Shown in pieces: positions 42,126 to 60,315 of a stretch of DNA of 64,000 nucleotides. The notes under the pieces were generated by a model. The model saw only the letters and a program-made list of their open reading frames with translations. It ran no database searches and was not told the origin of the DNA. Made by a program: the position numbers and the translations under genes. Each line of letters begins with the position of its first letter. Position 1 is the first letter of the stretch. The DNA lies in the IMG/VR virus record IMGVR_UViG_3300046660_000488, positions 1 to 64,000 of that record; one strand, 5' to 3'.

Positions 42126-42136
42126 AAAATAAGTGG

Positions 42137-42261: not shown

Positions 42262-42336
42262 GCCGGTGTAGCTCAGGGGTAGAGCGGAACTTTCGTAAAG
42301 TGATTGTCGGGGGTTCGATTCCCTCCTCCGGCACCA
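42262..42336 (+). tRNA. tRNA-Thr(CGT), atypical
   Basis: Cloverleaf with CCA; loop TT-CGT-AA; U-U in acceptor stem and only 3 Watson-Crick pairs in anticodon stem. Confidence 0.85.
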
Positions 42337-42359
42337 GAAACAACCCACATCCTTGTTCT

Positions 42360-42445
42360 GCCAACGTGGCTCAGTGGCGACAGCACCGGCTTTGTAAGCC
42401 GCCTCCGCAAGGACACCGTGGGTTCGAGTCCCACCGTTGGCTCCA
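42360..42445 (+). tRNA. tRNA-Thr(TGT) with long variable arm
   Basis: GCCAACG/CGTTGGC acceptor, loop TT-TGT-AA, variable hairpin TCC-GCAA-GGA, GTGGG-TTCGAGT-CCCAC, T-CCA. Confidence 0.9.
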
Positions 42446-42458
42446 ACTTTCTTGATAT

Positions 42459-42534
42459 GCTGGCGTGGCACAGTTGGTAGCGCGCTATACTCGTAATATA
42501 GAGGTCATCGGTTCGAATCCGGTCGCCAGCACCA
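42459..42534 (+). tRNA. tRNA-Thr(CGT)
   Basis: GCTGGCG/CGCCAGC acceptor, CTATA-CT-CGT-AA-TATAG, T-loop TTCGAAT, A-CCA. Confidence 0.93.
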
Positions 42535-45253: not shown

Positions 45254-45476
45254 CGAACGCCTTGACGGCGCGCGCGAAACGCTCCGCGAAGGTTGGGCCT
45301 CGCGGAGGTTTCGGCACGGCGTTGAAGTTACTACCGCCGTTGGAGCCGCAGCACAGGTTGGTGCAGGTGATGTAGCCGTCCGAGCAATTCTCGTCCGCCA
45401 CTTCGGCGTCGGTCTCAAGCTCTTTCCGCATGCCGTCTTCACCGCAGATCGGACAGTTCACCCACACCCTCGTCAT
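45240..45476 (-). CDS. small Zn-ribbon protein
   Basis: CPIC ... CTNLCC. Confidence 0.65.
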   Translation of the reverse strand: MTRVWVNCPICGEDGMRKELETDAEVADENCSDGYITCTNLCCGSNGGSNFNAVPKPPRGPTFAERFARAVKAFAKAF

Positions 45477-47050
45477 TCGATCTCACCCTTCACGGCCCGG
45501 TTCAGCAGGTCGATGGTGTTCTGACGCCCGTAGGCGGCCGTGAACGACCCGAAGCGCGGACCCTGCTCGTCACCGAACAGAACCTCGTACAGGCTCTGGA
45601 ACCATGCCCGCAGGGGCTGGAAATCGTGAGCCTTGCCGACCTCGTAGACCTCGAATTGATAGGCCTCCGGGTCGAGCCCATCAGCCATCTTCTCGAACCG
45701 CTCGACCAGATCGAGGAAGGCCGTGGCCTCCTGTTCGGTCGGGGCGCGTCGCTGGCGATCCTGTAGCAGGATGTCGCGGGCATAGTTGATCGCCCCGTCG
45801 ATCAGAGGGGTCAGGAAGGCCAGATCACCGGCCGACAGCGCCTTGTACTGTCGCAGGTAGGCGATCAGGCTCTCACGATCCTTGGCGCCGGACACCACCG
45901 CCAGATTCAGCAGCAGGCCATAGGTCACGTCGCTGCTGTAAGGCGGCGGCGTATCCCCGTGGATGTGCCAGATCGGCGAGTCGAGCTTGGCCGCGCCGGT
46001 GAGAGCCGGATAGGCGACCAGCGCCTTCAGGTACTCGTCGGTGGCGCGCGGAACCGTCTTGGCCGTGAAAATCTTGGCCTCGCGCGGCTTCAGGAACATG
46101 AAGTAGGCCAGCGGCCCCGTGGTGCTGTAGCGGCTCCACGTCTCCATGCTCATGCCGTTGCCGGACGACTTCGATTGCTTGCGGCCCTCGTCGTCGAGGA
46201 ACAGTTCATAGGTGAACGTCATCGGAGGCTTGCCGCCGATGGCCTTGCAGATGCGCGACGACAGCACGGCGCTGTCCATCAAGTCCTTGCCGTGCATTTC
46301 GTAGTCCACGTCGAAGACGACCCAGCGAGCGGCCCAGTCCACCTTCCACTGAAGCTTGGCGGCGCCTCCGCGCACGTCGATCAGCATGTCCACGCCCGCG
46401 TCGAACGTCGAATCCTTGAAGAACAGGCCGCGTCCGGCGTCGCCGAAGTCCTCAGACGGTCGGACGCTGGCATCGGCCAGCAAGACGCCGGAGTAAGCCA
46501 GCGGCATGAAGGCCGAGTACGTCGCCTTGCGGGCGTCACGCAGGGTCGGGAGCATGATCGCCTGAACAGCGTCGTAGCTGAGCAAGACGCGCTGTAGCAC
46601 GTCGTCGAACACGCCGTTGCGATAGCACTCGGTCGCCGAAATTAACTCGACGTCCTCGAAGCCCGACTGCTCGATGAAAGCCTTCAGCGCCGCGTTGTTG
46701 CGGTGCGCGAAGCTCTCGTACTCACCGAAAGGATCGGGGACCATCGTCAGCGGCTTGCCGAGGTGTTCGGCCATGCTTTCGGGCATGCCGTCCGGAACCT
46801 TGCGGAAGCCGTCGTAGTCGTCGCTGAAGACGATGAGGCGCGTGGCGACCGTGCCGCCCGTCAACTCGATGAAGGCGTCGCGAACCATCTGGGTGCGCGT
46901 GACCTCGCCGAACGTGCCGATGTGCGGGGCGCCCGAAGGACCAAAGCCGGTCTGGAACGTGACCAGCTTCTTGTCACCGACACGCTTCAGCAGAGCACGA
47001 GCCTGCTCGAACGGCCACGACTTGGCGTTCTGCGCGTCAGGATTGGTCAT
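45473..47050 (-). CDS. class I lysyl-tRNA synthetase
   Basis: SWPFE.A, TGFGPSGAPHIGTFGEV.RT, SDD.DGFRKVP, KLQWKVDW..RW, DYEM.GKDL, KQSKSSGNG, GPRFGSF. Confidence 0.95.
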   Translation of the reverse strand: MTNPDAQNAKSWPFEQARALLKRVGDKKLVTFQTGFGPSGAPHIGTFGEVTRTQMVRDAFIELTGGTVATRLIVFSDDYDGFRKVPDGMPESMAEHLGKPLTMVPDPFGEYESFAHRNNAALKAFIEQSGFEDVELISATECYRNGVFDDVLQRVLLSYDAVQAIMLPTLRDARKATYSAFMPLAYSGVLLADASVRPSEDFGDAGRGLFFKDSTFDAGVDMLIDVRGGAAKLQWKVDWAARWVVFDVDYEMHGKDLMDSAVLSSRICKAIGGKPPMTFTYELFLDDEGRKQSKSSGNGMSMETWSRYSTTGPLAYFMFLKPREAKIFTAKTVPRATDEYLKALVAYPALTGAAKLDSPIWHIHGDTPPPYSSDVTYGLLLNLAVVSGAKDRESLIAYLRQYKALSAGDLAFLTPLIDGAINYARDILLQDRQRRAPTEQEATAFLDLVERFEKMADGLDPEAYQFEVYEVGKAHDFQPLRAWFQSLYEVLFGDEQGPRFGSFTAAYGRQNTIDLLNRAVKGEIE

Positions 47051-48643: not shown

Positions 48644-48964
48644 TTAACGCATCGCTTTGGCTGCTGAGTCGCCGTACTTGAGGATCGTCAGGTACTTGAT
48701 GGCGTGGCCAACGTGGTTCTTGATCTCCATCAGTTCGTCGATCCGGGTATAGATCGGATAGACGGTGATGCCCTGCGTGCGGGCCACCATCAGAGCGTGG
48801 TTGATCTCGATGGCGGTCTGATTGTAGGCCTCTTCGAAGGCGTTCTCGACGTCCTCGTAGTTCACGCCGTCGAACGCCTTCAGATACTCGAACCCAGCGC
48901 TTACCAGCCGGTGAATGACCAGCAGAGTTGCCAGCGGGCTGAGGCCGTCTTGTTGATCACTCAT
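48644..48964 (-). CDS. hypothetical protein
   Basis: Coupled ORF. Confidence 0.6.
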   Translation of the reverse strand: MSDQQDGLSPLATLLVIHRLVSAGFEYLKAFDGVNYEDVENAFEEAYNQTAIEINHALMVARTQGITVYPIYTRIDELMEIKNHVGHAIKYLTILKYGDSAAKAMR

Positions 48965-49484
48965 CCTTGAGACTTTCGAAACGCACCAATCTGGAGTAGG
49001 GCAGGTTGTAGCAGGCCGCCTTGACTTCCCAGCCATTTGACGGGTCGATGTCGCCGACCTTCAGATAGGTCGCCTTGTCTTTGTAGGCTTCCTTCTCGAT
49101 CACCCCGAGGACGAACCCGCGCTGATAATCCTGCGTGTTCTTCGGCCGGTAGAGCGACACGAACACGTAGAAGTCGGCCTTCTGGGACGTGTTGAAATTG
49201 GCCACCGACGCCTCGTAGTCGATCCGGGGCTCGACCGTGCGATCCTTGGTCTTCACCTCGATGGACAGGTGCTCCATCGTGATGTCGTGCTGGTAGGTGT
49301 TGTGCGAGGTCGATCCGGGGAAAGCCTTGAGCACGACTTCCTCGCCGAGGAAGCCCGCCAGATTGCCTTCGCCGCGCCGGATGGAGTTCCGCAGGGCGCC
49401 CATTTCCTTGGCCTTCTCTGAGGCGCGGGAAACCATTTCCGAGGTGATCTCAACCTCGATGAAGCCGTTGTCGAGGATTTTCAT
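48957..49484 (-). CDS. putative PD-(D/E)xK nuclease-fold protein
   Basis: G.LGE ... HDI....IEVKTK ... DFYVFV. Confidence 0.55.
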   Translation of the reverse strand: MKILDNGFIEVEITSEMVSRASEKAKEMGALRNSIRRGEGNLAGFLGEEVVLKAFPGSTSHNTYQHDITMEHLSIEVKTKDRTVEPRIDYEASVANFNTSQKADFYVFVSLYRPKNTQDYQRGFVLGVIEKEAYKDKATYLKVGDIDPSNGWEVKAACYNLPYSRLVRFESLKDE

Positions 49485-49735
49485 TTGCGGAACATCGCCA
49501 TGAAGATCATCCAGATCAGCGAGATCGGCCAGAAGATGGCCAGCCCGAGGGCGGTGACTTTCTGGGTGGTTTCGTTGACTTCCCAACCCTGTTCCTCGCG
49601 GATTTCGACGATGGCTTGCTCCATCGCGGCGAGGTAGATTTTCAGGAAGGGGTTGATGCCAAGCAGCCAGATCGTCGCCAAGATCAGCGGCATCCAGTGG
49701 ATCGCTTGGAACTGTTGGATCAAATAGTCCATCAT
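49481..49735 (-). CDS. small membrane protein
   Basis: Two TM helices. Confidence 0.65.
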   Translation of the reverse strand: MMDYLIQQFQAIHWMPLILATIWLLGINPFLKIYLAAMEQAIVEIREEQGWEVNETTQKVTALGLAIFWPISLIWMIFMAMFRK

Positions 49736-50073
49736 CGCCTTGCAAAATATCTGGTGGCGAAATCCTTAGCGGACTCCACCACTTGCTTCGAAATAGACGA
49801 GTGATGCTTTCCAGATTGGAACACGTAGGTGAAACCATCACCCGTGTGCTCCAGCGTGAAGATGATCTTGGTTCCGGCGTCTGTCTCTTCAGCCACAACG
49901 ACTGCGTAACGGGGGCCAGACGTCGAGGCTTTGAGCGTGAAGCACGCGCCGTCAACGACGTACCGGCCGTCCTTGGGAGCGCCCTGCTCGACCGTCAAAT
50001 AGGCGGCTCGCGCGAGGAATTCCCCGAGAGACTTGGCATTACCCCACAATACGGGGTTGAACTCTAAAATCAC
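49732..50073 (-). CDS. hypothetical protein
   Basis: ORF coupled to the downstream gene. Confidence 0.55.
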   Translation of the reverse strand: MILEFNPVLWGNAKSLGEFLARAAYLTVEQGAPKDGRYVVDGACFTLKASTSGPRYAVVVAEETDAGTKIIFTLEHTGDGFTYVFQSGKHHSSISKQVVESAKDFATRYFARR

Positions 50074-50130
50074 TTAGACACCACAAATGTCGTTTACCAA
50101 ATTTAGGCGAGAACGATATTGGGTGCAACA

Positions 50131-50163
50131 AAAAAGCGTCCGACCCGAAGGTCAGACGCTTTT
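50131..50163. terminator. bidirectional intrinsic terminator
   Basis: AAAAAGCGTC.GACC-cgaa-GGTC.GACGCTTTTT. Confidence 0.85.
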
Positions 50164-50164
50164 C

Positions 50165-50393
50165 CGATCTGCTCGCTCAATTTTCGCCGAGGGCAAGCGT
50201 TAGGGTTTTCGAGGCCCTGTCGGCGTGACGGCGCCGGAACCCTTTGTATAACCGGAAGCTCAACCCGGCACTGCAATTACGTTCGCAATTACGCCCAGCC
50301 TTCCCGCCGGATTGGGGCCAGAGTTTGTATCGCCAACTCAGGTCAGAACACGGGCTAGTCCTCCAGAGCAGGTGGCCACCCGCCCTCTTGGAC
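50165..50393 (-). ncRNA. candidate ~230-nt ncRNA with its own promoter
   Basis: TTGCTC-N17-TATCCT promoter with operator in the spacer; terminator downstream; no credible ORF. Confidence 0.5.
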
Positions 50394-50441
50394 CTGCACA
50401 GGATAGGCGATCTGGTAAACCAGAGCAAGGGTCCAGATACG

Positions 50442-50474
50442 AAAAATCCCCGGTGAGCCTTGGCTGACCGGGGA
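50442..50474 (-). terminator. intrinsic terminator
   Basis: TCCCCGGT.AGCC-aa-GGCT.ACCGGGGA-TTTTT on the minus strand. Confidence 0.75.
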
Positions 50475-50725
50475 CCAACGAACGCGCCGGAGCGCGCTTG
50501 CTTTGGGCGGTAAGCATTAACCCGCTCAGACTCCCGGCGCCGGGTTTCTGACCAGCCGAATCCCGAGGGATAGGACTGTCCTTAATGACTTAGGAGTACC
50601 TTGAGAAGCATGGCCGGTCAAGGCATCCCAGAGGGCGCGCGAGACATTACGTCCCCGGTGGAGCGCCGACCCGCCGCATGCCTCCGGCCGGAAAGCATGC
50701 GGAAAACTGGTGAGGGGTCGCGCAC

Positions 50726-51040
50726 AAAATAAGAGAGCCGCTTTCCGTTTGGTGACCCCGGTTTGAAGGGGATCAGGTCCACGGTCAGCGGCTCTCCGCC
50801 CAATCTGATTGCTCAGTCGGGTTGCCTCTTACGACCCGCCGTTTCCGGCTCCGCTGGAGGACTTTTTGGCTTCTCCACTGGGTTTGAACCTTGTGGATGG
50901 CCGGTAGCTTTCGACCTTTCGGTCTAGGCCTCGCACTGGGGTTCGACGCCAGTACCGCTTTAGTCCGTAGCTTTGTGGGCCGTAGGACTTCCTTGGGGTT
51001 CGAAGCCAAGGGTTTGCTTCGACTTTCGTCTTAGCGGGGT
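50726..51040 (-). ncRNA. structured RNA segment with repeated T-loop-like and GNRA hairpins
   Basis: Four TC(G/A)AACC-loop hairpins and two GAAA hairpins; ends in a GAGAGCCGCT/AGCGGCTCTC stem plus TTATTTT. Confidence 0.5.
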
Positions 51041-51044
51041 CTCG

Positions 51045-52205
51045 ATGGCTTGAGACTACAGCCATAGAACAACCGATCTTTACCCAAGGGTGTTCTCAAG
51101 GTTGCGGCCCTGAGTTTCTTGGTTATCCACGGCCAGCCCACGTGTTACGGCAGGTCAGGTCGTATCGGTCCGTGTCGCCTTGTTCCTACCTCGCGGTAGA
51201 CGAGTGGCTTTTCTCGCGTCGCTTCATACTACTCGACACTTCCCATCCCTCCTGCTTCGCGGGCAGTTCACGGCTGCAACACCGTTAAGAAATCTTCCGT
51301 ATCGACAAGGGCGACTTTGCCGGTCATTCCCCTGCCCCAATTCTCTTGCGAGTTGGGGATTAGACACTTTTCGTATGAAGCCGGGTCAGGCTTGTGCTTT
51401 TGTTTTGAGGACGGTTTTGACACCGCGACCTACAGCTTGGAAGGCTGTCGCTCTACCACTGAGCTACATCAAATCCACTGGGACGTGCTGACCCGTTGCT
51501 CCATAAGGCTTTCACCCTACAGAATACAACACACCCCGTTCGTTTCATCCTGCTAAGACTACTCCGAGAAACCTTTGGACAACGTGCCTGAGCCCGTCAC
51601 CCTCGATCATGCCGCACGCCCTTTCCCGCTAAGGATCGAACCTTACGACTATCCGTTACTTTCTCCCATGGATGGGTTTGCGTGCCATGGATACCGGGTG
51701 CGAACCCGATTTGAGCTACCTTCCTCGTCGGTTAGGCAACTTCCTATCCCCTCTCGGAGACCCATGACCCCACCTTCCGGAATATCTCCCATCCTCTGGT
51801 AAGGCGTGGAAGACCCTCTCGGGAAGCTCGGACCTGTATAGGTGGACAGCCACCGAAGTGACAGCGGGGTTATGTGGACATACCCCCTTTGAGCCCATTG
51901 CTGGGCCTCATCCTTTACGGCGCTATACCGCCGTTCCGCACCACAAGTGATTACCGTTCCTCTTACGAATACCCGAAGGCATCGTATTTGACCCGGCTCT
52001 GCTTGTGGGCAGATACGCTCAGCACTGTGGATCGTCTTCTTGCGAAGGCCATCCGAAGAAACTAAAGCGCGCCATCCGAAAACGTCGCTACTTCGATCTC
52101 ATCACATGGTCTAAGCGGTCGTTCGAAACCACTTTGCTGCCTCTCGACAGCAGTACCAAGCCACGTCTCCGGAGCGAACCCCGTTGCCGTGCCGATCATT
52201 GACCG
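51045..52205 (-). ncRNA. GOLLD-like giant ncRNA (~1.15 kb)
   Basis: TTGACG-N17-TAAGTT promoter; no coding signal; dense hairpins with GNRA/UUCG loops; embedded tRNA-like element; 3' motifs (GTGTTGTATT...GCAAC, AAAAGTG, GAGTAG, GTGGATAA, GTAGTCTCA) recalled from memory as GOLLD-like, not searched. Confidence 0.6.
51403..51473 (-). tRNA. tRNA-Gly(TCC)-like element embedded in the large RNA (probably not a functional tRNA)
   Basis: Canonical D arm GCTC-AGTGGTA-GAGC and ACAGC-CT-TCC-AA-GCTGT; aberrant T loop; AT-rich acceptor; no CCA. Confidence 0.7.
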
Positions 52206-52212
52206 GAGAACC

Positions 52213-52241
52213 AACTTACCGACTTCTTTATTCCTCGTCAA
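52213..52241 (-). promoter_or_regulatory. sigma70-like promoter for the giant ncRNA
   Basis: TTGACG-17 nt-TAAGTT preceded by an A-tract. Confidence 0.7.
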
Positions 52242-52532
52242 CCACTTTTTTTCGTTCGATCCGAAGATTTTCGCGAACCAGTTTGTCAACCCGGATTTCC
52301 GGAAGCCGCTGAGGTGTTTCCCTCGACCGACCGTGAAATCAACATACCCAGACCCCCTGATCGGTGCAACACAAAAAGTGCGAAAAACCGTCATTTGCCT
52401 GCATGATCTGTGGACAAGTCTGAAACATCGTTTGATTTCAAAGACTTGCGACGCTTCTACCAGATCGTCTTCGATCAATTAACGTGCGTTCGCGCGGATT
52501 TGGTTCAGAGAATGGTCATGCTTCGGACGATT

Positions 52533-53066
52533 TCAGTCCCAACCATTGCCTTCCAGCGGATGGGGCTCGTCGGCTGGGATGGTCCAGAATTTCCCGTCAC
52601 CCTGCGAACAGAGTTTCCACATGGTCGCCTTGCTCAATATGCGCGCGGCGACCGGCTCACCGGGGTTGAGGCGGTCGAAGGTGAACACGGGGTTGTCTTT
52701 CCGCAGTTTGCGGTTCCGCAGGATCGACAGGTAATAATGCTCGGTGGCTTCCCAGTCGATCTCACCGGAGGCCGTATCGACCAGCAGGCCGCGCTGCACA
52801 TAAGAGAGCGCGGCGTCGAGCTTGGGCGTGGGGAACGTCATCACGCACCAGAAGGCGCCGGAGCGGATCGGCTTGTCGATCTCGATGTAGCCGAGGACGT
52901 GGGCGGCCAAATTGATGATGCTCGCGTGATAGATGCGCGCATCTTCTTCGCTGTCGTAGGGGATGCCCTCGATCTCACCCATCGCATAGTCGCGGTTCAA
53001 TGAACCCTGCGACAGCTTGAGCAGATGGTTTTCTTGGCTGGGTGAGAGGCGTGTCGGCAGAGACAT
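52533..53066 (-). CDS. hypothetical protein
   Basis: 177-aa ORF abutting the upstream gene. Confidence 0.65.
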   Translation of the reverse strand: MSLPTRLSPSQENHLLKLSQGSLNRDYAMGEIEGIPYDSEEDARIYHASIINLAAHVLGYIEIDKPIRSGAFWCVMTFPTPKLDAALSYVQRGLLVDTASGEIDWEATEHYYLSILRNRKLRKDNPVFTFDRLNPGEPVAARILSKATMWKLCSQGDGKFWTIPADEPHPLEGNGWD

Positions 53067-53564
53067 TTAGACGATCAGGCGCGAGACCTGTAGGCCGCCG
53101 TTGAACTCGCAGACCGTGCCGATCTTCAGATCGTCGTAGCTGTGGTGGATCGTGACCACGGTCCACGTATATTCTTGGCCTTCCATGGCCGCGCAGAATT
53201 CCCGCGCATATTGCTCTTCGGCGAAGGCGGCGGCGAAATGGCGCTCTTCGTTCAGCCAGCCGGGCTTGTGGCGGAAGACGACGGCCTTGATCTTGTCCGA
53301 TCCGGCGTAGGACGTGAGCATCGGGGCGAACCGGGCATAGGCGGCTTGGCGCTCCAGTTGCTTGGGGTGCATGCCGGTATGGACGGCCGGATCGCCGCTC
53401 AGCGCCGGACAGATGTCGTCCTCGCCGTATTTGCAGCCGCCGAGGTTTTCACCCTCGTTGCAGTGGGACATATGCACGCCATACTGGCGATGGTCGGCTC
53501 GGATGATCTCGCGTGCTTCGGTCATGGCCCTCTCCCGGTTTGTAACCGTTGTCTCATAGCACAT
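53067..53564 (-). CDS. hypothetical protein (start may be 53525)
   Basis: H..HC....GCKYG.D..CP motif. Confidence 0.65.
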   Translation of the reverse strand: MCYETTVTNRERAMTEAREIIRADHRQYGVHMSHCNEGENLGGCKYGEDDICPALSGDPAVHTGMHPKQLERQAAYARFAPMLTSYAGSDKIKAVVFRHKPGWLNEERHFAAAFAEEQYAREFCAAMEGQEYTWTVVTIHHSYDDLKIGTVCEFNGGLQVSRLIV

Positions 53565-53649: not shown

Positions 53650-56600
53650 ATGACGACTCATTACTCCGGCCTTCAATTGCGCGGCAACTTGTTCATCAAC
53701 AAGGAACTGCAACCGGCTGTCGTTTGGGTTTCTCCTCTGCGTAAGGCTCTGGGTCCGTATGGCTCGGACCTTAATCCCAGCAAAGATGTTGACATCACGT
53801 TCGTCGCTCACGCAAGCGACCCGAACGCTGTGCTTGTCTATTCCGTCGTCGTGGGGGTTGTTCCGGACGGACTGACGCTCGATTCAGCAACCGGTAAGAT
53901 GGTTGGCACGCTGACCGCGTCCGAAGGTCTGGCCGAATTCACCGTGCGCGCCACGATCCAGAACACTCAACTGTTCGCCGAGCGCCACTTCCGCATGGTC
54001 ATCGGCAACGCCCCGCCGCCCGTCTGGATCACGCCCGCTGGCCTGATCGACGAAGTCGGTGAGAGCGAGACCTACACCACCACCCTGCTGGCCGAAGACC
54101 CCTACGAGCTTCCGGTCACCTATTTCCTCGTGGGCGGCTCCCTGCCGCCGGGCATGTTCCTCAACAGCACCACGGGCCAAATCTACGGTTCGACGCCCGA
54201 CCTCGACGATGACATGATCTGCGACTTCACGGTCTCGGCGTCGAACAACTCGCGCAACACCACGCGCGATTTCACGATCTACCTGACCGCCACGCCGCCC
54301 GGCGACGCGGCGTACTGGATCACGCCTGCCGGTGACGTGGGCGAAGGCTACGAACTGACTGAATTCACGTTCGACCATCTGGAAGCCATCGACCCGAACG
54401 CCCTGCCGATCACCTACGTCCGCGTCGCCGGTAACATTCCGGACGGCCTAATGGTCGATGCCAACAGCGGCGTGATCTACGGAACCATGGGTCCGCAGGC
54501 CGACGACACCCTGTTCAAGTTCATCATGGGCGCGCGCACGTCGGTCTACACGACCAAGCGCATGTTCACGATCATGGTCAAGCACGTCACGCCCCCGAGC
54601 TTCGGCGACGACAACCCGACACAGATCACGATGCGCGGTCTGGAGAACGAGGTGTTCTACAGCAACGCCGTGCACGCCACGAGCCCGACGCCGATCCCGA
54701 TCACCTACACGATCACGAACCTTCCGACCCCGCTGATCTTCAGCCCGTTCACGGCTGAAATCCACGGCATCATGCCGCCGGTCATCGAAGACGCCGACCA
54801 CATCTACAACATGGTCGTCACGGCCTCGAACGGCATCAAGTCAAAGAGCGTCACGGTCCAACTGACCGACGAGAAGAACCTGCCGCCGTATTTCACGGTC
54901 TCGGGATCGCTCGGCGAAGCGCTGGGCGGCAAGCCGTTCAACGCGCCTGTCCCGCTGGCCATCGACCCCAACGGCGTCCAGACCGTCTACACGCTGCTGA
55001 ACCCGGAAGACCTGCCGGAATCCATCACGTGGGACGCCAGCGTCGGCCTGCTCACGGGTACGTATCCGCCTGCCCCGACCGAAGACGTGATCACCACGTT
55101 CCAACTGCAAGTCTTCGACGGCGTGTTCACGACCAATGCGACGCTGACGATCACGTCGTGGCTGAACACGGAGCCGGAATGGATTACCGCACCGGGCCAG
55201 ATCGGCACGATCATCGAGAACCACAACGGATCGTTCGTGGTTGAAGCCCGCGATCCACAGAACGAGCCGATCATCTACTCTCGTGTCGGCGGCGCCTTCC
55301 CGCCGGGCATGGACATTGACCCGAACACGGGCGCGATCAGCGGCCCTGACGTCGGCCCGGTTCTCGATGTCGATTTCGACATCTACGACTTCGTCATCCG
55401 AGCCGACGATGGCGTGCTGTTCACCGACCGCGCCTTCCGCATCGTCGTGACCAAGGACTACCCGCCGATCTGGGACACGCAGCCGGGCGTCATCGTTGAC
55501 GTGCTCGCCGGTAAGCAATTCACCTTCCAGCTTGAGGCCCACGATCCGAACGGCACGACGCCGGTCTATTCGGTGATCGACGATGGCGGTCTTCCGATTG
55601 TCGATCCGACCACGCAACTTCTCTACGAAGAGAGCGGCGTGATCATCAACGGTCGCACCATCCGCGCCAAGATGCCCCAGCCGTCCAACCCGGCCGATGA
55701 GTCCGAAGACTTCAACCTCATCATGTCCATTGATGATGGCTACAACCCGCCGGTTGAGCGCACCTTCACGCTCCGGACCAACCGCAACACGCCGCCGGTT
55801 TGGAACACCAACATCTACGCCAGCAACTTCGTGGTCGTGCCGACCACGGCCAACATCGCCACCTATCAAATTGGCAACCCGCTGGTTAAGACCGAAACGT
55901 TGTCGAACGGCAACGTGGTCATCTACTCGCTGCTCGACCAGTACGAGACCGAAGTAATCGACCTCCAGCTTGGTGCTGACGATCCGCAGACCGGCGTGGA
56001 CAGCCTCTACTACTTCTACTCGGATTCGTCGTCCGTCTTCGAATTCAACGGCCAAGAGGGCGTTGGTGATGACGGCGTGCTGTTCATCAACCAGAACACC
56101 GGGCGCCTGACCGGCCGTGTCCCGACCGTGGATGCCGACAAGTTCTGGCACATCAACGTCACGGCTTACGACAAGACCGAAGTCTCGATGGAAAACCGCT
56201 ACTACGGCACGCCGCAGCGGTTCCTGCTCTCGACCCGCTTCAACAAGCCGCCGGAGTGGATCACCGCGCAGAACATCGGCCGCGTCGAACGTCTGGCCTA
56301 CACCCTGCAATTCAACGCGATCAACAAGGGCAACCTGCCGGAAATGCAGTACGTGCTGAACAGCGGCGTGCTCCCGGCCAACATGACCCTGACGAACACG
56401 GGCGTCCTGTCCACGACCCTGCCGCCTAACAAGACGGAAGCGGTCGAAGAGGACAAGACCTACACGTTCGCGGTCACGGCCAACAACGGCATCAAGCAGT
56501 CCACTAAGTCGTTCAACTTCACGGTCTACAAAAACCTCGAACCGGTGTGGGAACCCGCGACCCTCGAAGGTCTGGGCCAAATCCCGTTCACCGGCCAAAT

Positions 56601-59600
56601 CTCCGCGACCGATCCGAACCAAGGCTTCGGCGATCCTCTGGTTTACACCATCGTGGACCGCTCGCAGGTTCCGTCGTCGGTCAAGTTCAACATCGCCGAT
56701 CCGTTCGGCGCCTCGGTGGTGTCCTACCAGACGTTCGACGCCGACTATGTCGATTACAAGGATGCGGCCCAGTGGTCGTTCGTTGGCAACCCCGCGCTGG
56801 TTCCGGGCAAGTTTGGCAACGCCGTCAGCATGGATGGCACGAGCTACCTGACCGCCGAAGTGGGCGCTCTGGGTCAATCGCCGTTCACGTTCGAGACGTG
56901 GTTCAAGCGCGACGGTGGCGGTCCGGTGCAGCACCTGATCACGCTGGGTGATCTGGGTGAAAACGGCGTCAGCCTCTACCTCGACAACGGCGTTCTCAAG
57001 CTGGACGAAGACACGATCAACGTCCTGAACGGGACCGCGTCGATCTCCGACACCGCGTGGCATCACGTGGCGCTGGTCCGCGACGGCAACGACTACACGA
57101 TCTATCTGGACGGCGTCGTTGACGCGCAGATCACCATGCCGACCGTCGCGTCCCTCTCCGCGACGACGTTGCTGCTTGGCTCGTTCGGCATCACGCCGGA
57201 CACGCTGTTCACCGGCGCTCTGGATGATTTCCGCCTGACAGCCGCCGCTCGCTACACGCAGGCCTTCACGGCGCCGACCAAGGCGTTCGACCGCACGATC
57301 ACGGGAGTCATCACCGGCAACCTGCCGCTGGTGCAAGCCGACGCCTATTACCCGTTCGACGTCAGCGTCTCCGACAATCTCGTCAGCGTTCCGGCCTCGT
57401 TCACGATCCACAACATCCACGACCAAGACCCGATGTGGAGCACGCCCATGGGCCTGATCTACAGCAACTTGGAAGACACGCCGTTCACGTTGACTGTCGG
57501 CGCGGCCGATCCGGAAGCCAACCAAATCGCGTACTCGCTGTTCTCGGGGACCTTCCCGTTCACGCTGAACTCGGTCACGGGTGAGATTTCGGGCACGCTT
57601 CCGTCTGTCTCGACCGATACCGACTACGACTTCACCCTGCGCGCGTCGGATGGCATCCATATCTCGGATCGCAGTTTCCGCATCACGTCTGAAGACAACC
57701 TGCCGCCGGTCTGGGTGTCGTGCAGCACCACGATGGACATGCACGCTCTTGGTGGCGAGTTCTCGTCCTACCAGTTCGAGGCTACCGACCCGAACGGCCG
57801 TCCGACGCTGACCTACGCCATCACTGGTGGCACGACGCCTCCGGGCCTCAACTTCGGAACGGGTGGAGCCCTGACGGGCACGTTGAACACCGTTCAGGCC
57901 GACCAAGACTACACCTTCGACGTCACTGTTTCTGATGGCGTCTTCTTCGTGCCGCGCACGTTCACGTACCGCGCCCTGCTGAACCGCGCGCCGTATTACG
58001 TCCCGAACGCGACGACGATCCTGACCCAGTTCGAGCAGACGTTCATCGCCGATACGCTCGACCCTATCGACATCTACGACCCGGATGGTTCGGAACTGAC
58101 GATCCAAGTCCAGCCGCCGCAATTCCCGCTCCAGTACCACGTTGACAATGCGGGAACGGATCACGCGACTGTTTGGATCACGGGCGGTTCTCTGCCTGCC
58201 GTGATGACCGACACCACGTACCAGATGACAATTCTGGCCGACGATGGCGTCAACTTCCGCTCGCAGCAATACGCCTTCCGCGTCAAGTTCAACTCGCCGC
58301 CGTCGTTCACGTCGCCTGCAACGTTCCCTGACGCGGTCGAGCAGACTCCGTACTATGCCGTGGCCAACGCCGTCTCGAACGGCATGCCGGTGTTCTACGC
58401 CGTCGTCGGCGGAATGCTTCCTCCGGGCCTGACCCTGAACGTAGCCAACGGCGCGATCACGGGTACGGCGCCGCTCGTCGATGATGACCAGCAGTTCCCG
58501 TTCCAACTCCAAGCCACGACCGGCATCAAGGCGACTGTGCAGGACGCCGTCATCACGGTCCGCAAGAACCTGCCGCCGGTGTGGCTGACGACGACGCTCG
58601 CCAACGTGATGGAGAACACGGTCATCACGCCGTTCCAACTGGTGGCGACCGACCCGAACCATCAGGCGATCACCTACACGTGGCTGAGCGGCTTCCTGCC
58701 GCCGGGCCTGACGGCCAACTACGTCATCAACCCGAACACGGTGACCATCATCGGCAACACGCCGATCTTGGCCAACGACACGGTCTACAATTTCCGCGTC
58801 GGCGCGTCGGACGGCTACATCCGCACGGACCGCGATTTCGTCCTGACCGTGAAGTACAACCAGCCGCCGGTCTGGGTGACCAATGCTGGCCTGATCGCCA
58901 CGGTCAACGAACAAGACAGCCTCAGCAACCAGACGCGCGTCATCGCGACCGATCCGGAAGTGCAGGGCATCACCTACGCGATCCACAACACGGCTGCATG
59001 GCCGGGCTGGCTGACGCTGCAAACCAATGGCTTCCTGACTGGCACGGCGCCGCAGACCGCCAACGGTTTCACGACCGCTTTCGAGATCGACGCCAGCGAC
59101 GGCAACCGCTTCGTCACGCGCCAATTCTCGATCAACGTTCAGCACGTCGGCACACCGCCGACTTGGATCACGCCTGCTGGCCAAATTCTGGCTGGAGACG
59201 AAGGTAACTCGGCCGTCTTCACGCTGGTCGCCAACGACAATGTCTACCACGACACGGTGACCTACGCGCTGAACTCGACCGGGTTCCCGAGCACGATGAC
59301 GCTGCTGTCCAACGGCTACATCTACGGCACGTACCCGAGCATTTCGACGACGACCACGTACACCTTCGACGTGGCCGCAATCAACGTCTTGGCCGAAAAG
59401 CGTATTCGCCAATTCAGCATCACGTCGAACAACGTCGATTACCTGCAAGTCACCAGCCCGACCGGCGTCAATACGTACTATGGCAAGGGCGATGTCGTTC
59501 CGATGACGACAGAAGGCGAATGGACGGTTACCGTCCTGAAGCCTCTGAAGCTGAACGGCAAGCTCTGGGGCGCTGGCGGCGGCACGACCAACGGTGGCGC

Positions 59601-60315
59601 TGGCGGCTTCACGACGGGTGACACGGCTACCCTCACGACCGGAACGATCCTCCGGGCATGGGTCGGCGGCGGCGGCTTCGTCGGTAGCCCGACCCTTGGG
59701 CACGACGGTCCCTTCGGCAATGGCGGCAACTGCGGACGTCCCAACGGCGGTGGCATTTCTCTCGGCACGGGCGGTGGTCTCACCGGTCTGTTCCTAAGCT
59801 CCGTCTCGCAAGGCAACGCTCTGCTCGTCGCGGGCGCTGGCGGCGGCGGCGGCACGTCCGGTCCAGCGGCTGGCGCTGGTGGCGGCACGGTCGGCGCGAA
59901 GGGTAACGACTCCGGAAACGGTGGCGGCGGCTTCGGCGGCACGCAAACCAGTGGTGGTGCACGTGGTGGATCGTCCGGTTTCGACACCAACTCTCTGGGT
60001 GGTAGCGCGCTTACAGGTGGCCGTGGTGCGGCCAATATCTCGTCGATTTACTCACCCGGCGGCGGCGGTGCAGGTTACTGGGGTGGTGGCGCCGGTTACG
60101 GCAACAACCAATGGGGCGGCGCCGGTGGCGGTGGTTCGGGCTATCTGGCTGCGAGCATCACCAACGGTTCGCTCACGGCCGGTTCCGGTACGACGCCCGC
60201 TAACGCCAACGATAGTGACCGCCTTACCTACGCACCCAATGCCGGTAGCCCCGGCTTGTCGAACACGTCGAACTCACAAGCTCCGGCGGGTCTCATGGTC
60301 CTTCGGATTCTCTAA
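53650..60315 (+). CDS. giant virion structural protein (tail fibre/baseplate-like): tandem Ig/cadherin-like repeats, LamG domain, Gly-rich C-terminus
   Basis: TAAATA at 53616; repeats N..P.W.T..G ... A.DP ... Y....G.LP.G ... G.I.G ... F...A.DG ... R.F; FTFETWF...WHHVALVR...DDFR; WGAGGG Gly-rich tail. Confidence 0.9.
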   Translation: MTTHYSGLQLRGNLFINKELQPAVVWVSPLRKALGPYGSDLNPSKDVDITFVAHASDPNAVLVYSVVVGVVPDGLTLDSATGKMVGTLTASEGLAEFTVRATIQNTQLFAERHFRMVIGNAPPPVWITPAGLIDEVGESETYTTTLLAEDPYELPVTYFLVGGSLPPGMFLNSTTGQIYGSTPDLDDDMICDFTVSASNNSRNTTRDFTIYLTATPPGDAAYWITPAGDVGEGYELTEFTFDHLEAIDPNALPITYVRVAGNIPDGLMVDANSGVIYGTMGPQADDTLFKFIMGARTSVYTTKRMFTIMVKHVTPPSFGDDNPTQITMRGLENEVFYSNAVHATSPTPIPITYTITNLPTPLIFSPFTAEIHGIMPPVIEDADHIYNMVVTASNGIKSKSVTVQLTDEKNLPPYFTVSGSLGEALGGKPFNAPVPLAIDPNGVQTVYTLLNPEDLPESITWDASVGLLTGTYPPAPTEDVITTFQLQVFDGVFTTNATLTITSWLNTEPEWITAPGQIGTIIENHNGSFVVEARDPQNEPIIYSRVGGAFPPGMDIDPNTGAISGPDVGPVLDVDFDIYDFVIRADDGVLFTDRAFRIVVTKDYPPIWDTQPGVIVDVLAGKQFTFQLEAHDPNGTTPVYSVIDDGGLPIVDPTTQLLYEESGVIINGRTIRAKMPQPSNPADESEDFNLIMSIDDGYNPPVERTFTLRTNRNTPPVWNTNIYASNFVVVPTTANIATYQIGNPLVKTETLSNGNVVIYSLLDQYETEVIDLQLGADDPQTGVDSLYYFYSDSSSVFEFNGQEGVGDDGVLFINQNTGRLTGRVPTVDADKFWHINVTAYDKTEVSMENRYYGTPQRFLLSTRFNKPPEWITAQNIGRVERLAYTLQFNAINKGNLPEMQYVLNSGVLPANMTLTNTGVLSTTLPPNKTEAVEEDKTYTFAVTANNGIKQSTKSFNFTVYKNLEPVWEPATLEGLGQIPFTGQISATDPNQGFGDPLVYTIVDRSQVPSSVKFNIADPFGASVVSYQTFDADYVDYKDAAQWSFVGNPALVPGKFGNAVSMDGTSYLTAEVGALGQSPFTFETWFKRDGGGPVQHLITLGDLGENGVSLYLDNGVLKLDEDTINVLNGTASISDTAWHHVALVRDGNDYTIYLDGVVDAQITMPTVASLSATTLLLGSFGITPDTLFTGALDDFRLTAAARYTQAFTAPTKAFDRTITGVITGNLPLVQADAYYPFDVSVSDNLVSVPASFTIHNIHDQDPMWSTPMGLIYSNLEDTPFTLTVGAADPEANQIAYSLFSGTFPFTLNSVTGEISGTLPSVSTDTDYDFTLRASDGIHISDRSFRITSEDNLPPVWVSCSTTMDMHALGGEFSSYQFEATDPNGRPTLTYAITGGTTPPGLNFGTGGALTGTLNTVQADQDYTFDVTVSDGVFFVPRTFTYRALLNRAPYYVPNATTILTQFEQTFIADTLDPIDIYDPDGSELTIQVQPPQFPLQYHVDNAGTDHATVWITGGSLPAVMTDTTYQMTILADDGVNFRSQQYAFRVKFNSPPSFTSPATFPDAVEQTPYYAVANAVSNGMPVFYAVVGGMLPPGLTLNVANGAITGTAPLVDDDQQFPFQLQATTGIKATVQDAVITVRKNLPPVWLTTTLANVMENTVITPFQLVATDPNHQAITYTWLSGFLPPGLTANYVINPNTVTIIGNTPILANDTVYNFRVGASDGYIRTDRDFVLTVKYNQPPVWVTNAGLIATVNEQDSLSNQTRVIATDPEVQGITYAIHNTAAWPGWLTLQTNGFLTGTAPQTANGFTTAFEIDASDGNRFVTRQFSINVQHVGTPPTWITPAGQILAGDEGNSAVFTLVANDNVYHDTVTYALNSTGFPSTMTLLSNGYIYGTYPSISTTTTYTFDVAAINVLAEKRIRQFSITSNNVDYLQVTSPTGVNTYYGKGDVVPMTTEGEWTVTVLKPLKLNGKLWGAGGGTTNGGAGGFTTGDTATLTTGTILRAWVGGGGFVGSPTLGHDGPFGNGGNCGRPNGGGISLGTGGGLTGLFLSSVSQGNALLVAGAGGGGGTSGPAAGAGGGTVGAKGNDSGNGGGGFGGTQTSGGARGGSSGFDTNSLGGSALTGGRGAANISSIYSPGGGGAGYWGGGAGYGNNQWGGAGGGGSGYLAASITNGSLTAGSGTTPANANDSDRLTYAPNAGSPGLSNTSNSQAPAGLMVLRIL

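What the first reader, a model, noticed from the sequence alone, without database searches (positions are those of the whole stretch)
51045..52241. Oversized GOLLD-like giant RNA carrying an embedded tRNA-Gly mimic
Seen: about 2 kb without credible coding signal in an otherwise wall-to-wall genome. A TTGACG-N17-TAAGTT promoter points into it on the minus strand, and it has many stems capped by GNRA/UUCG loops plus extra T-loop hairpins (TAAGG-TTCGAT-CCTTA near 51630). At 51403-51473 a tRNA-like element has perfect D and TCC anticodon arms but a broken T loop, a non-Gly acceptor and no CCA. Known: GOLLD RNAs (~800 nt) are phage- and tRNA-associated and can contain tRNAs. The 3' motifs match my recollection of GOLLD, unverified. 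Inference: an expanded variant that displays an anticodon arm, possibly as a decoy for tRNA-targeting defences.
Basis: partly seen in the sequence, partly recalled or inferred. Interest (0 to 1): 0.8.

Follow-up and report, generated by a model that had tools for sequence, protein, structure and literature searches.

The report
Oversized GOLLD RNA with pseudo-tRNA
This gene-free stretch of a 578-kb phage-like contig encodes a divergent, unusually long member of the known GOLLD family of cage-forming phage RNAs. It has a tRNA-shaped insert, which is already documented for the family, so it extends a known kind rather than founding a new one.

Summary
Window 52241-51047 (minus strand) is a structured RNA gene. 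The Rfam GOLLD model matches 51537-51047 end to end (129.6 bits, E 3.9e-35, below the curated 150-bit cut-off). A tRNA-like element (51473-51403, 56.7 bits) sits in the GOLLD variable linker.

The window is the first 64 kb of a 578,292-bp IMG/VR viral contig that encodes ArgRS, class I LysRS and tRNAs.

One relative was found, a 1.6-kb metagenome contig (L029). It shows that the promoter, a ~400-nt 5' domain, the GOLLD core and a further ~250 nt 3' of the core are conserved, with helix-preserving substitutions. The transcript is therefore probably about 1.45-1.5 kb, against about 800 nt for typical GOLLDs.

A tRNA or pseudo-tRNA in the GOLLD linker is already published, and I found one in about half of 26 other GOLLD loci. 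Here the cloverleaf helices covary, but the anticodon loop differs at 4 of 7 positions (UCC versus AUC with C33) and the T loop is aberrant. It is kept as a shape, not as a decoding tRNA.

The decoy idea has no support. Verdict: a new, expanded variant of a known family, of moderate interest.

The parts
52213..52247 (-). Promoter. The conserved block AAGTGGTTGACGA holds the -35 hexamer TTGACG (52241-52236). A 17-nt spacer follows, then the -10 hexamer TAAGTT (52218-52213).
   Evidence: L029 keeps both hexamers (TTGACG, TAGAGT) and the 17-nt spacing, although 8 of 17 spacer bases differ. The same 13-mer lies upstream of the tRNA-Thr array at 42131-42143(+). The generic sigma-70 scan does not call it.
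51941..52206 (-). Fast-evolving 5' leader of about 266 nt. It begins with a conserved terminal hairpin (52206-52192).
   Evidence: Identity to L029 is only 28-47% over 52170-51931, although both sides are conserved. The terminal hairpin keeps its pairing through C-G to U.G and G.U to G-C changes. The leader contains 3 UUCG-capped and 2 GNRA-capped hairpins. No covariation signal could be obtained because the alignment is unreliable.
51538..51940 (-). Conserved 5' domain of about 400 nt, the size of a canonical GOLLD 5' domain. It includes the T-loop-like hairpin at 51645-51630.
   Evidence: Most of it is 85-97% identical to L029, with dips to 60-72% and a hairpin extension of about 39 nt in L029. 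There are 5 compensatory pair changes against 0.92 expected (P=0.002). A covariance model of 51832-51538 hits directly upstream of the Rfam GOLLD cores in L001/L016/L017/L019 (E 4e-7) and L004 (E 2e-4). In the resulting alignment 89.9% of cells are paired, against 36-44% in slid controls.
51047..51537 (-). GOLLD 3' domain, the part covered by Rfam RF02032. It includes the long-range helix formed by 51381-51373 with 51229-51221.
   Evidence: cmscan scores 129.6 bits, E 3.9e-35, over model positions 1-416 of 416. The family-invariant motifs GAGTAGT, GTGGATAA and GTAGTCTCA are present. Fewer pairs are broken against L029 than expected (10 versus 16.5, P=0.01).
51403..51473 (-). tRNA-like (pseudo-tRNA) module in the GOLLD variable linker. 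It has a UCC anticodon, a 6-nt T loop and a non-Gly acceptor stem.
   Evidence: Rfam tRNA scores 56.7 bits; ARAGORN makes no call. The D and anticodon arms are about 90% identical to phage tRNA-Gly genes. Against L029, pairs 3:70, 50:64 and 53:61 change on both sides and stay paired, and 49:65 goes from G.U to G-C. The anticodon loop differs at 4 of 7 positions and the T loop differs throughout.
50800..51046 (-). Lineage-specific structured 3' extension. It consists of GNRA hairpins and three hairpins with UUCGA/UUCAA-type loops (51011-50991, 50953-50935, 50896-50875), plus a 34-nt block (50933-50900) that is invariant against L029.
   Evidence: Conservation continues without a break past the Rfam 3' end: 82-85% to 50982, then patchy at 47-85% to about 50825. 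Fewer pairs are broken than expected (12 versus 21.4, 0 of 2000 permutations). The hairpin at 50953-50935 is rebuilt from different bases in L029. The folding z-score is -6.0. The covariance model R1 finds it only in the window and L029, and in none of 35 other loci.
50726..50796 (-). Putative intrinsic terminator. A 10-bp outer stem (GAGAGCCGCT / AGCGGCTCTC) encloses an inner hairpin and is followed by TTATTTT.
   Evidence: The sequence and coordinates come, and the fold. It is not called by the simple terminator scan, presumably because its loop is larger than the scan allows. It is poorly conserved in L029, whose contig ends here. The assignment is inferred.

Best explanation
**What it is.** This is a gene for a divergent GOLLD-family RNA on a 578-kb phage-like contig.

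**Transcript (inferred).**
- It is transcribed on the minus strand from its own sigma-70-type promoter (-35 at 52241, -10 at 52218).
- The start is near 52206.
- The end is most likely at the hairpin plus U-run at 50796-50726.
- This gives an RNA of about 1.45-1.5 kb.

**Layout from 5' to 3' (shown from sequence and comparison).**
- A fast-evolving leader of about 266 nt.
- A 5' domain of about 400 nt, homologous to the 5' domains of bona fide GOLLDs.
- The GOLLD 3' domain, which carries a tRNA-shaped module in its variable linker.
- A structured 3' extension of about 250-320 nt, seen only in this lineage.

**How it probably works (inferred by homology).** By analogy with the solved GOLLD structures, the 3' domains would form the ring and the 5' domains the caps of a homo-oligomeric RNA cage. 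The linker, and so the tRNA-like module, would face the interior. The leader and the 3' extension would be extra peripheral domains.

**The tRNA module.** It is kept for its L-shaped fold and not for decoding. Its helices covary, while its anticodon and T loops are free to change. It may serve as a handle, or as tethered cargo, for tRNA-binding factors or RNase P. The biological role of the whole family is still unknown.
For: **GOLLD core.**
- RF02032 matches full length, E 3.9e-35. The relative L029 scores 137.5 bits.
- All motifs that are invariant across 16 GOLLD cores are present.
- The long-range helix is intact.

**5' domain.** It is homologous to that of GOLLDs scoring 195-202 bits on Rfam, and its structure is supported by covariation.

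**Boundaries.**
- Promoter hexamers are conserved while the spacer varies.
- The identity profile runs from 52250 to about 50825.
- No promoter-like site was found anywhere in 49800-52800 under the scan's criteria, and no terminator-like site lies on the minus strand between the core and the extension.

**Structure on the minus strand only.** The tetraloop census and folding z-scores of -6.0 and -4.1.

**Substitutions respect helices**.

**tRNA module.**

**Known family traits.** Cage formation, the linker facing the interior, tRNAs in the linker and phage context are published (PMC12286853, PMC12990946, PMC6582537).

**Source.** The window is bases 1-64000 of IMGVR_UViG_3300046660_000488. It encodes RNR, ArgRS, LysRS and tRNAs.
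Against: - The Rfam score is below the curated gathering cut-off (129.6 versus 150 bits).
- Only one close relative exists in the collections searched, so the covariation for the flanks rests on a pairwise comparison and on MFE-predicted helices.
- There is no expression data; both RNA ends are inferred.
- The 5' leader is not alignable and gives no covariation signal.
- Conservation of the 3' extension is patchy beyond 50980, and the proposed terminator is not conserved in L029, whose contig ends there.
- Two further terminator-ended non-coding units follow (50726-50130), so the true 3' end could lie elsewhere.
- Cage formation is extrapolated from distant family members. The expansions could alter or prevent it.
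Confidence: 0.8

Rival explanations
1. The GOLLD RNA has the ordinary size, about 51940 to 51047 (roughly 900 nt). The 5' leader and the 3' extension would then be separate elements: an upstream leader or small RNA, and one or more independent downstream small RNAs or decayed remnants of a tRNA array.
For: - In 8-9 other loci a tRNA gene starts 6-17 nt after the GOLLD 3' hairpin, so the family's usual 3' end is at that hairpin.
- The extension model R1 finds nothing beside any other GOLLD.
- The leader is hypervariable.
- The extension holds T-arm-like hairpins, which could be tRNA relics.
- Two more terminator-ended non-coding units lie downstream.
Against: - No promoter-like site was found in 49800-52800 under the scan's criteria, and no minus-strand terminator lies between the parts.
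- The only promoter conserved in L029 lies upstream of the leader.
- Conservation is continuous across the junction between core and extension.
- Rfam's tRNA model finds nothing in 50720-51046 even at E up to 10.
- The leader starts with a conserved, covarying 5' hairpin placed about 7 nt after the -10 hexamer.
Confidence: 0.17
2. The embedded element is a working tRNA-Gly(UCC). RNase P and 3' processing would excise it from the GOLLD precursor, and it would then be used in translation.
For: - The cloverleaf scores 56.7 bits on the Rfam tRNA model.
- The D and anticodon arms are about 90% identical to annotated phage tRNA-Gly genes.
- Some other GOLLD linkers hold tRNAs that look canonical, for example L009 tRNA-Lys at 69.5 bits and L014 tRNA-Tyr at 64.8 bits.
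Against: - ARAGORN rejects it.
- The T loop has 6 nt (GUCAAA) with G54, and the closing pair is U53-A61.
- The acceptor stem lacks the bacterial Gly identity set (G1-C72, C2-G71, G3-C70, U73, from established knowledge) and has a U6.C67 mismatch.
- In the closest relative the anticodon loop is CCAUCAC (C33, A34) while the helices are preserved. Decoding is therefore not the selected property.
- In Mycolicibacterium aubagnense the pseudo-tRNA inside GOLLD was not detectably expressed on its own (PMC6582537).
Confidence: 0.06
3. The tRNA-like module is a decoy that soaks up host tRNA-targeting defences, such as anticodon nucleases. The cage would display or shield it.
For: - The window's anticodon stem-loop closely resembles a real tRNA-Gly(UCC).
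- The anticodon loop changes quickly between close relatives, at 4 of 7 positions inside an otherwise identical 45-nt stretch. That pattern could reflect an arms race.
- The contig invests in tRNA biology: ArgRS, LysRS and tRNAs.
Against: - No defence or counter-defence gene was identified nearby; the neighbours are ORFans.
- To my knowledge L029's loop (C33, A34-U35-C36) matches no natural tRNA, so it is a poor mimic.
- In the solved structure the linker faces the closed interior of the cage (PMC12286853).
- Rapid loop change is explained equally well by a lack of constraint.
- No covarying partner for the loop exists in cis.
Confidence: 0.07
4. The region is not an RNA gene. It would be degenerate or unannotated protein-coding sequence, or non-functional spacer.
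For: Short ORFs of up to 138 aa exist on both strands.
Against: - The Rfam E-value is 3.9e-35.
- Tetraloop enrichment is specific to one strand.
- The substitutions against L029 preserve helices.
- Indels that would shift the frame lie in conserved parts.
- The candidate ORFs have no Pfam or PHROG hit.
- No reading frame is conserved over its length in L029.
Confidence: 0.01

Closest known systems
GOLLD RNA (Rfam RF02032). Examples: marine env-38 (833 nt, 14-mer cage, PDB 9MEE), Streptococcus agalactiae GOLLD (700 nt, 12-mer) and the GOLLDs of Caulobacter phiCbK-like phages.
   Same: - The 3' domain matches the family model over its full length and has all the invariant motifs.
- A 5' domain of about 400 nt lies directly upstream and is homologous to that of other GOLLDs.
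- A variable linker follows the first hairpin.
- The element is phage-borne and also encodes tRNAs.
   Different: - It scores 20 bits below the Rfam gathering cut-off.
- Three hairpins of the core are expanded by about 15-17 nt each.
- It has an extra hypervariable 5' leader of about 266 nt and a conserved 3' extension of about 250-320 nt, found beside none of the other GOLLD loci examined.
- It has its own promoter and probable terminator, rather than sitting inside a tRNA array with a tRNA 6-17 nt downstream.
- The inferred length is about 1.45-1.5 kb, against 700-833 nt.
GOLLDs of Mycobacterium / Mycolicibacterium tRNA arrays, which have a tRNA-Phe or pseudo-tRNA in J13/15 (Morgado 2020, cited in PMC12990946; Behra 2019, PMC6582537).
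   Same: A tRNA-like gene sits in the same linker, and it is judged to be a pseudo-tRNA rather than a separately expressed tRNA.
   Different: The anticodon differs (UCC here). The element and its inferred host differ: a 60% GC megaphage-size contig here, an actinobacterial tRNA island there. The pairwise comparison here adds that the cloverleaf helices are maintained by compensatory changes while the anticodon loop drifts.
ROOL RNA (RF03087-type, cage-forming, phage-associated).
   Same: It is a large, ornate phage RNA found near tRNA genes. It forms a homo-oligomeric cage with a disordered internal linker, so the likely mode of action is similar.
   Different: There is no sequence or structure match. 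Nothing but GOLLD, tRNA and weak small-RNA matches in the terminator-rich stretch 50109-50540 was found in 49500-53200 at E up to 10.
tRNA-like structural modules in larger RNAs, such as the tRNA-like domain of tmRNA and viral 3' tRNA-like structures.
   Same: A tRNA-shaped fold is embedded in a bigger RNA and is kept for its shape or for factor recognition, not for decoding.
   Different: Those modules are terminal, are aminoacylated, and have defined partners. This one is internal, has no CCA end, and nothing is known about charging or partners.

Membership tests
GOLLD (RF02032) | Score at or above Rfam's curated gathering cut-off of 150 bits | tested here: not met
   The window scores 129.6 bits and L029 137.5 bits. 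The match is nevertheless full length (positions 1-416 of 416) with E 3.9e-35. Five other environmental GOLLD loci also score 110-150 bits. The cut-off is an operational threshold, not a biological trait.
GOLLD (RF02032) | Invariant sequence motifs of the 3' domain (GAGUAGU, GUGGAUAA, GUARUCUCA, CGAAA-GUGnCUAAU, AAAGCAnAAG) | tested here: met
   All columns that are invariant across 16 aligned GOLLD cores are present in the window.
GOLLD (RF02032) | Secondary structure of the 3' domain, including the long-range helix that encloses the multi-hairpin core and the terminal hairpin with the GUARUCUCA loop | tested here: met
   The CM alignment flags only a few non-canonical pairs. The 9-bp helix 51381-51373 / 51229-51221 is perfect. 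The terminal hairpin stem covaries across 16 sequences and is formed here.
GOLLD (RF02032) | Variable linker (J13/15) after the first 3'-domain hairpin, which may carry a tRNA | tested here: met
   The tRNA-like element lies in the model's linker region. tRNA hits lie at the same place in about half of 26 other GOLLD loci. Published in PMC12286853 and PMC12990946.
GOLLD (RF02032) | A 5' domain of about 400 nt upstream, less conserved, forming a separate structural domain | tested here: met
   Model R2 (window 51832-51538) hits directly upstream of the Rfam cores of L001/L016/L017/L019 (E 4e-7) and L004 (E 2e-4). 89.9% of cells are paired and 28 pairs change on both sides, against 3-8 in slid controls. 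The alignment was fitted to the model, so it leans towards this structure. The published P1-P13 consensus itself was not available for comparison.
GOLLD (RF02032) | Phage or prophage location, usually next to tRNA genes | tested here: met
   The source is a 578-kb IMG/VR viral contig. The nearest tRNAs (three tRNA-Thr) are 8.5 kb away, not adjacent.
GOLLD (RF02032) | Assembly into a homo-oligomeric nanocage (10- to 14-mers) | not testable with these tools
   This needs in vitro transcription plus cryo-EM or mass photometry. The inter-chain contacts could not be mapped without the published 3D or secondary-structure figure.
Functional tRNA-Gly | Cloverleaf recognised by tRNA models | tested here: inconclusive
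   Rfam tRNA scores 56.7 bits, above its cut-off of 29, but ARAGORN does not call it.
Functional tRNA-Gly | Canonical 7-nt T loop (U54-U55-C56-R57-A58) closed by G53-C61 | tested here: not met
   The loop has 6 nt (GUCAAA) with G at position 54, and the closing pair is U53-A61 (alignment).
Functional tRNA-Gly | Bacterial glycine identity elements in the acceptor stem (G1-C72, C2-G71, G3-C70, U73; from established knowledge) | tested here: not met
   The stem reads U1-A72, U2-A71, U3-A70, with discriminator A73 and a U6.C67 mismatch.
Functional tRNA-Gly | Anticodon conserved among close relatives | tested here: not met
   The window has CUUCCAA (UCC) and L029 has CCAUCAC (AUC, C33), although the D arm and anticodon stem are identical.
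ROOL | Match to the Rfam ROOL model | tested here: not met
   There is no ROOL hit in 49500-53200 at E up to 10, nor in the window at gathering thresholds.

The most novel reading that the evidence does not exclude
The lineage may have turned GOLLD into a larger, stand-alone tRNA-handling device. In this reading the cage carries a tethered tRNA-shaped module whose anticodon loop is under diversifying selection, acting as bait or decoy for host anticodon nucleases or tRNA-modifying enzymes. The new 3' domain, rich in UUCGA-type (T-loop-like) hairpins, would dock tRNA elbows or tRNA-binding proteins. This would be the first concrete functional link between GOLLD cages and tRNA warfare.
Probability: 0.08. 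Interest if true: 0.8.

Novelty: new variant of a known kind. Interest (0 to 1): 0.4.

Why it matters
GOLLD is one of very few natural RNAs shown to build closed multimeric cages, and its function is unknown.

- **A natural test of what the scaffold tolerates.** This locus is an expanded version of about 1.5 kb, with its own promoter, an extra 3' domain and three enlarged hairpins, on a megaphage-size contig. It could show whether the extra domains decorate the outside or the inside of the cage.
- **A testable statement about the linker tRNA.** The comparison with L029 suggests the linker tRNA is conserved as a shape, through helix covariation, and not as a decoder, since the anticodon is free to change. 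This narrows the published hypotheses of tRNA storage or tRNA cargo.
- **A practical point for annotation.** Many real GOLLDs, this one included, fall below Rfam's gathering score, so routine annotation leaves them as unexplained gene-free gaps.

Tried and rejected
**Searches for relatives that found little or nothing.**
- DNA similarity of 50100-52300 to 50,697 phage records matched only generic tRNA pieces.
- Megablast of 40000-64000 against phages and plasmids found nothing.
- The flanking proteins (332 aa and 177 aa) have no syntenic relatives in IMG/VR. The 177-aa protein has no homologue at all among 5.8 billion proteins.
- Exact patterns from the 3' extension and from the 5' domain found only the source contig in viral contigs.
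- The genome-contig scan gave two unrelated MAG hits with no GOLLD match.
- The single metagenome scan gave only one close relative, L029.

**Analyses that gave no signal.**
- A search for a cis partner that covaries with the anticodon loop found only 4-mers at chance level.
- RNAalifold on a MAFFT alignment of 16 cores recovered only the terminal hairpin, because the alignment is not structure-aware.
- A tblastn test for a conserved reading frame gave fragmented hits in all frames, which reflect DNA identity and not coding.
- The generic sigma-70 scan found no promoter. The promoter is supported only by comparison.
- L018 and L037 are too similar to each other to test whether other huge-phage GOLLDs also have 3' extensions.

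**Literature.** Morgado 2020 (PMC7549688) is not held in the library.
Full report
**1. What is at the coordinates**

The interval lies in the largest ORF-poor gap of the window. Between the ORFs at 48957-49955(-) and 52533-53066(-) nothing exceeds 138 aa. The two largest candidate ORFs have no Pfam or PHROG match.

A gathering-threshold Rfam scan of the whole window reports only four tRNA matches. One of them is at exactly 51403-51473 on the minus strand, at 56.7 bits. ARAGORN finds the three tRNA-Thr genes at 42262-42534 but not this element.

With E-value reporting, the GOLLD model RF02032 matches 51537-51047(-) over all 416 model positions. The score is 129.6 bits and E is 3.9e-35, which is 20 bits below the curated cut-off of 150. 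The tRNA-like element falls in the model's variable linker.

- TTGACG-N17-TAAGTT lies at 52241-52213.
- The hairpin TAAGG-TTCGAT-CCTTA lies at 51645-51630.
- GNRA-capped and UUCG-capped hairpins are strongly enriched on the minus strand only. There are 10 against 1.27 expected and 4 against 0.39 expected, reached by none of 300 shuffles. The plus strand has 2 and 0.

**2. Source and context**

A motif scan of IMG/VR returned a locus 100% identical to the window. The contig ranges given for flanking-protein hits show that the window is bases 1-64000 of IMGVR_UViG_3300046660_000488, a contig of 578,292 bp.

The window encodes:
- a ribonucleotide reductase small subunit, ArgRS and a glutathionylspermidine synthase;
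- a class I LysRS and a 2221-aa protein with Ig-like repeats;
- three tRNA-Thr genes.

Most other ORFs have no family match. This fits a huge phage. No similar DNA exists in the phage or plasmid record collections.

**3. Relatives**

The motif pattern GAGTAGT...GTGGATAA...GTARTCTCA recovered 19 viral, 16 metagenomic and 2 genomic loci. In most of the viral and metagenomic loci Rfam confirms GOLLD at 159-304 bits. In six more it scores below the cut-off:
- five score 110-150 bits: L008 149.7, L043 145.7, L009 144.8, L038 130 and L018 110.7;
- L033, which ends near a contig edge, scores 62.

A sub-threshold score is therefore common among environmental GOLLDs and does not indicate a new class.

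The window carries every column that is invariant across 16 aligned GOLLD cores.

Only one locus is a close relative: L029, a 1,597-nt metagenome contig. It is 84% identical over window 51938-50900, with a further match over the promoter. Rfam gives it 137.5 bits for GOLLD and 57.2 bits for tRNA.

**4. Extent of the RNA**

The alignment of the window with L029 (A2) gives this identity profile:

| Window interval | Identity to L029 | Part |
|---|---|---|
| 52250-52171 | about 70% | promoter and 5' start |
| 52170-51931 | 28-47%, effectively unalignable | 5' leader |
| 51930-50982 | mostly 80-97%, with local dips at an L029 hairpin insertion and at 51771-51697 | 5' domain, core, start of extension |
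| 50981-50825 | patchy, 47-85% | 3' extension |
| beyond about 50825 | decays | L029 contig ends near 50735 |

Both sequences have TTGACG, a 17-nt spacer and a TAnnnT hexamer (TAAGTT, TAGAGT). Eight of the 17 spacer bases differ.

The 13-mer AAGTGGTTGACGA occurs exactly twice in the window: at this promoter, and about 120 nt upstream of the tRNA-Thr array. This suggests a shared promoter type for the element's RNA genes.

A hairpin at 52206-52192, about 7 nt after the -10 hexamer, keeps its pairing through C-G to U.G and G.U to G-C changes.

Conservation does not stop at the Rfam 3' end (51047). It continues through a 34-nt invariant block at 50933-50900. No promoter-like site was found in 49800-52800 under the scan's criteria, and no minus-strand terminator separates the core from this extension.

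The first terminator-like structure is at 50796-50726: a 10-bp outer stem, an inner hairpin, then UUAUUUU.

I therefore infer a transcript of about 1.45-1.5 kb running from about 52206 to about 50726. Typical GOLLDs are 700-833 nt (PMC12286853, PMC12990946). The ends are inferred, not shown.

**5. Evidence for structure in each part**

I predicted helices from the window sequence alone. I then scored L029's substitutions against permutations that place the same substitutions at random.

| Part | Result |
|---|---|
| 5' conserved domain (51940-51538) | 5 compensatory pair changes against 0.92 expected (P=0.002) |
| Rfam core | 10 broken pairs against 16.5 expected (P=0.01) |
| 3' extension (51046-50800) | 12 broken pairs against 21.4 expected (0 of 2000 permutations) |
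| 5' leader | no signal, but the alignment there is unreliable |

Folding z-scores are -6.0 for 51050-50720 and -4.1 for 52215-51538.

In the extension:
- a GAAA tetraloop becomes GUAA, which is still a GNRA loop;
- the hairpin at 50953-50935 is rebuilt from different bases in L029, with the stem changing from ACTGG/CCAGT to TAAGG/CCTTA.

A covariance model of the extension (R1) matches only the window and L029 among 37 sources. It is a lineage-specific addition.

A model of the 3' part of the 5' domain (R2, window 51832-51538) matches directly upstream of the Rfam cores of L001/L016/L017/L019 (28.7 bits, E 4e-7) and L004 (20 bits, E 2e-4). On the resulting alignment 89.9% of cells pair, against 36-44% when partners are slid. 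Twenty-eight pairs change on both sides, against 3-8 in the slid controls. That alignment was fitted to the model, so it leans towards this structure.

The 5' domain is thus a genuine GOLLD 5' domain of the usual size, about 400 nt. The extra length comes from three sources:
- the 266-nt leader;
- the 3' extension;
- three core hairpins enlarged by about 15-17 nt each.

**6. The tRNA-like module**

*In the window*:
- It has normal D and anticodon arms.
- The anticodon loop is CUUCCAA (UCC).
- The T stem closes with U53-A61 on a 6-nt loop, GUCAAA.
- The acceptor stem is U1-A72, U2-A71, U3-A70, with U6.C67 mismatched.
- The discriminator is A73, and no CCA is encoded.

The bacterial glycine identity set (G1-C72, C2-G71, G3-C70, U73; established knowledge) is absent. 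The D and anticodon arms are about 90% identical to annotated phage tRNA-Gly genes. The module probably derives from a captured tRNA-Gly.

*Compared with L029*:
- The first 31 nt carry one change, which is compensated (3:70, U-A to C-G).
- The T stem changes at three pairs and all stay paired: C50-G64 to U-A, U53-A61 to G-C, and G49.U65 to G-C.
- The T loop differs throughout: AUCGUAU, 7 nt.
- The anticodon loop differs at 4 of 7 positions: CCAUCAC. ARAGORN reads it as 'tRNA-Asp (atc)', with C at position 33.

Selection therefore keeps the cloverleaf helices but not the decoding loop. No segment elsewhere in the RNA covaries with the anticodon loop.

**7. How this compares with what is known**

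Published work already covers the following:
- GOLLD forms closed 10- to 14-mer cages. The 5' domains form the caps and the 3' domains the ring. The variable linker is disordered and faces the interior (PMC12286853; PMC12990946).
- A Mycolicibacterium GOLLD holds a tRNA-Phe in J13/15.
- In M. aubagnense the internal gene is a pseudo-tRNA with no separate expression (PMC6582537).

In my own sample, Rfam tRNA hits lie inside the GOLLD span in about half of 26 distinct loci. They range from canonical-looking to truncated or rejected by ARAGORN:
- L009 tRNA-Lys scores 69.5 bits and L014 tRNA-Tyr 64.8 bits.
- L003 and L011 match only model positions 7-64 and 8-63.
- L018 is not called by ARAGORN.

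The embedded tRNA is thus a family trait and not a novelty.

What does differ here is the organisation. In 8-9 loci a tRNA gene starts 6-17 nt after the GOLLD 3' hairpin, so GOLLD is normally part of a tRNA array. This locus stands alone, with its own promoter, a 3' extension and a probable terminator. The nearest tRNAs are 8.5 kb away.

**8. Mechanism, with what is shown and what is inferred**

Shown:
- GOLLD homology of the core and of the 5' domain.
- The position and aberrant features of the tRNA-like module.
- Conservation of the promoter and of the 3' extension in one relative.
- Minus-strand-specific signatures of structure.

Inferred:
- The transcript ends.
- That leader, core and extension are one molecule (about 0.6-0.7 likely).
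- That the RNA multimerises into a cage like its solved relatives (about 0.5-0.6).
- That the tRNA module acts through its shape.

The decoy hypothesis is not excluded but has no positive support. L029's non-natural loop and the inward-facing linker argue against it.

**9. Verdict**

This is a new, expanded variant of a known family, not a new class. Interest is moderate. It would be a useful natural construct for structural work on GOLLD, and it supplies a testable statement about the linker tRNA. Neither the family nor the embedded tRNA is new.

Noticed in passing
window 42131-42143 (+) and 52235-52247 (-): The 13-mer AAGTGGTTGACGA, which contains a -35-like TTGACG, occurs exactly twice in the window: upstream of the tRNA-Thr array and upstream of the GOLLD RNA. 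With up to 2 mismatches there are 10 sites against 1.7 expected. It may be an element-specific promoter motif.
   Followed up: partly
window 50726-50442 and 50441-50130 (-): Two further ORF-poor units lie downstream of the RNA. Each ends in a strong hairpin plus T-run, at 50473-50442 and 50163-50130. Folding z-scores are -3.35 and -2.8. Rfam gives only weak sub-threshold small-RNA matches here (sX11, anti-hemB, Xoo2, Atu_C9, asX2). They may be additional small RNAs or read-through 3' parts. Conservation could not be tested because L029 ends before them.
   Followed up: partly
window 42262-42534 (+): An array of three tRNA-Thr genes (CGT, TGT, CGT). ARAGORN gives the middle one 86 nt, which is long for a tRNA-Thr.
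   Followed up: no
window 8459-10063 (+), 45473-47050 (-), 616-1635 (+), 23437-24621 (-): The contig encodes ArgRS, a class I LysRS, a ribonucleotide reductase small subunit and a glutathionylspermidine synthase, among mostly ORFan genes. This is typical of huge phages.
   Followed up: partly
window 53650-60315 (+): A 2221-aa protein with 12 He_PIG Ig-like repeats, a laminin-G/ConA-like domain and a C-terminal glycine-rich domain of the ALK/LTK type. It starts 1.4 kb upstream of the RNA promoter on the opposite strand.
   Followed up: no
L009 798-1046 (-): A 68.8-kb viral contig with a GOLLD and 18 tRNA genes has a full-length but sub-threshold match to archaeal RNase P RNA (RF00373, 54.1 bits against a cut-off of 84, E 1.4e-12) next to the tRNA array.
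   Followed up: no
L001 8908-9279; L017 5323-5694; L019 4853-5224; L008 1953-2032; L010 656-735: Several viral contigs carry tmRNA genes, including two-piece alpha-type tmRNA, within about 2 kb of their GOLLD gene. In L001/L016/L017/L019 ARAGORN reads the linker tRNA-like element with a UCA (opal-reading) anticodon.
   Followed up: no
L018 617-1162; L037 12958-13418: In the 221-224-kb contigs, whose GOLLD scores 110.7 bits, about 550 nt without any ORF of 40 aa or more follow the GOLLD. This stretch includes a long inverted repeat around a T-arm-like sequence. Other huge-phage GOLLDs may therefore also have 3' additions. The two copies are too similar to test this.
   Followed up: partly
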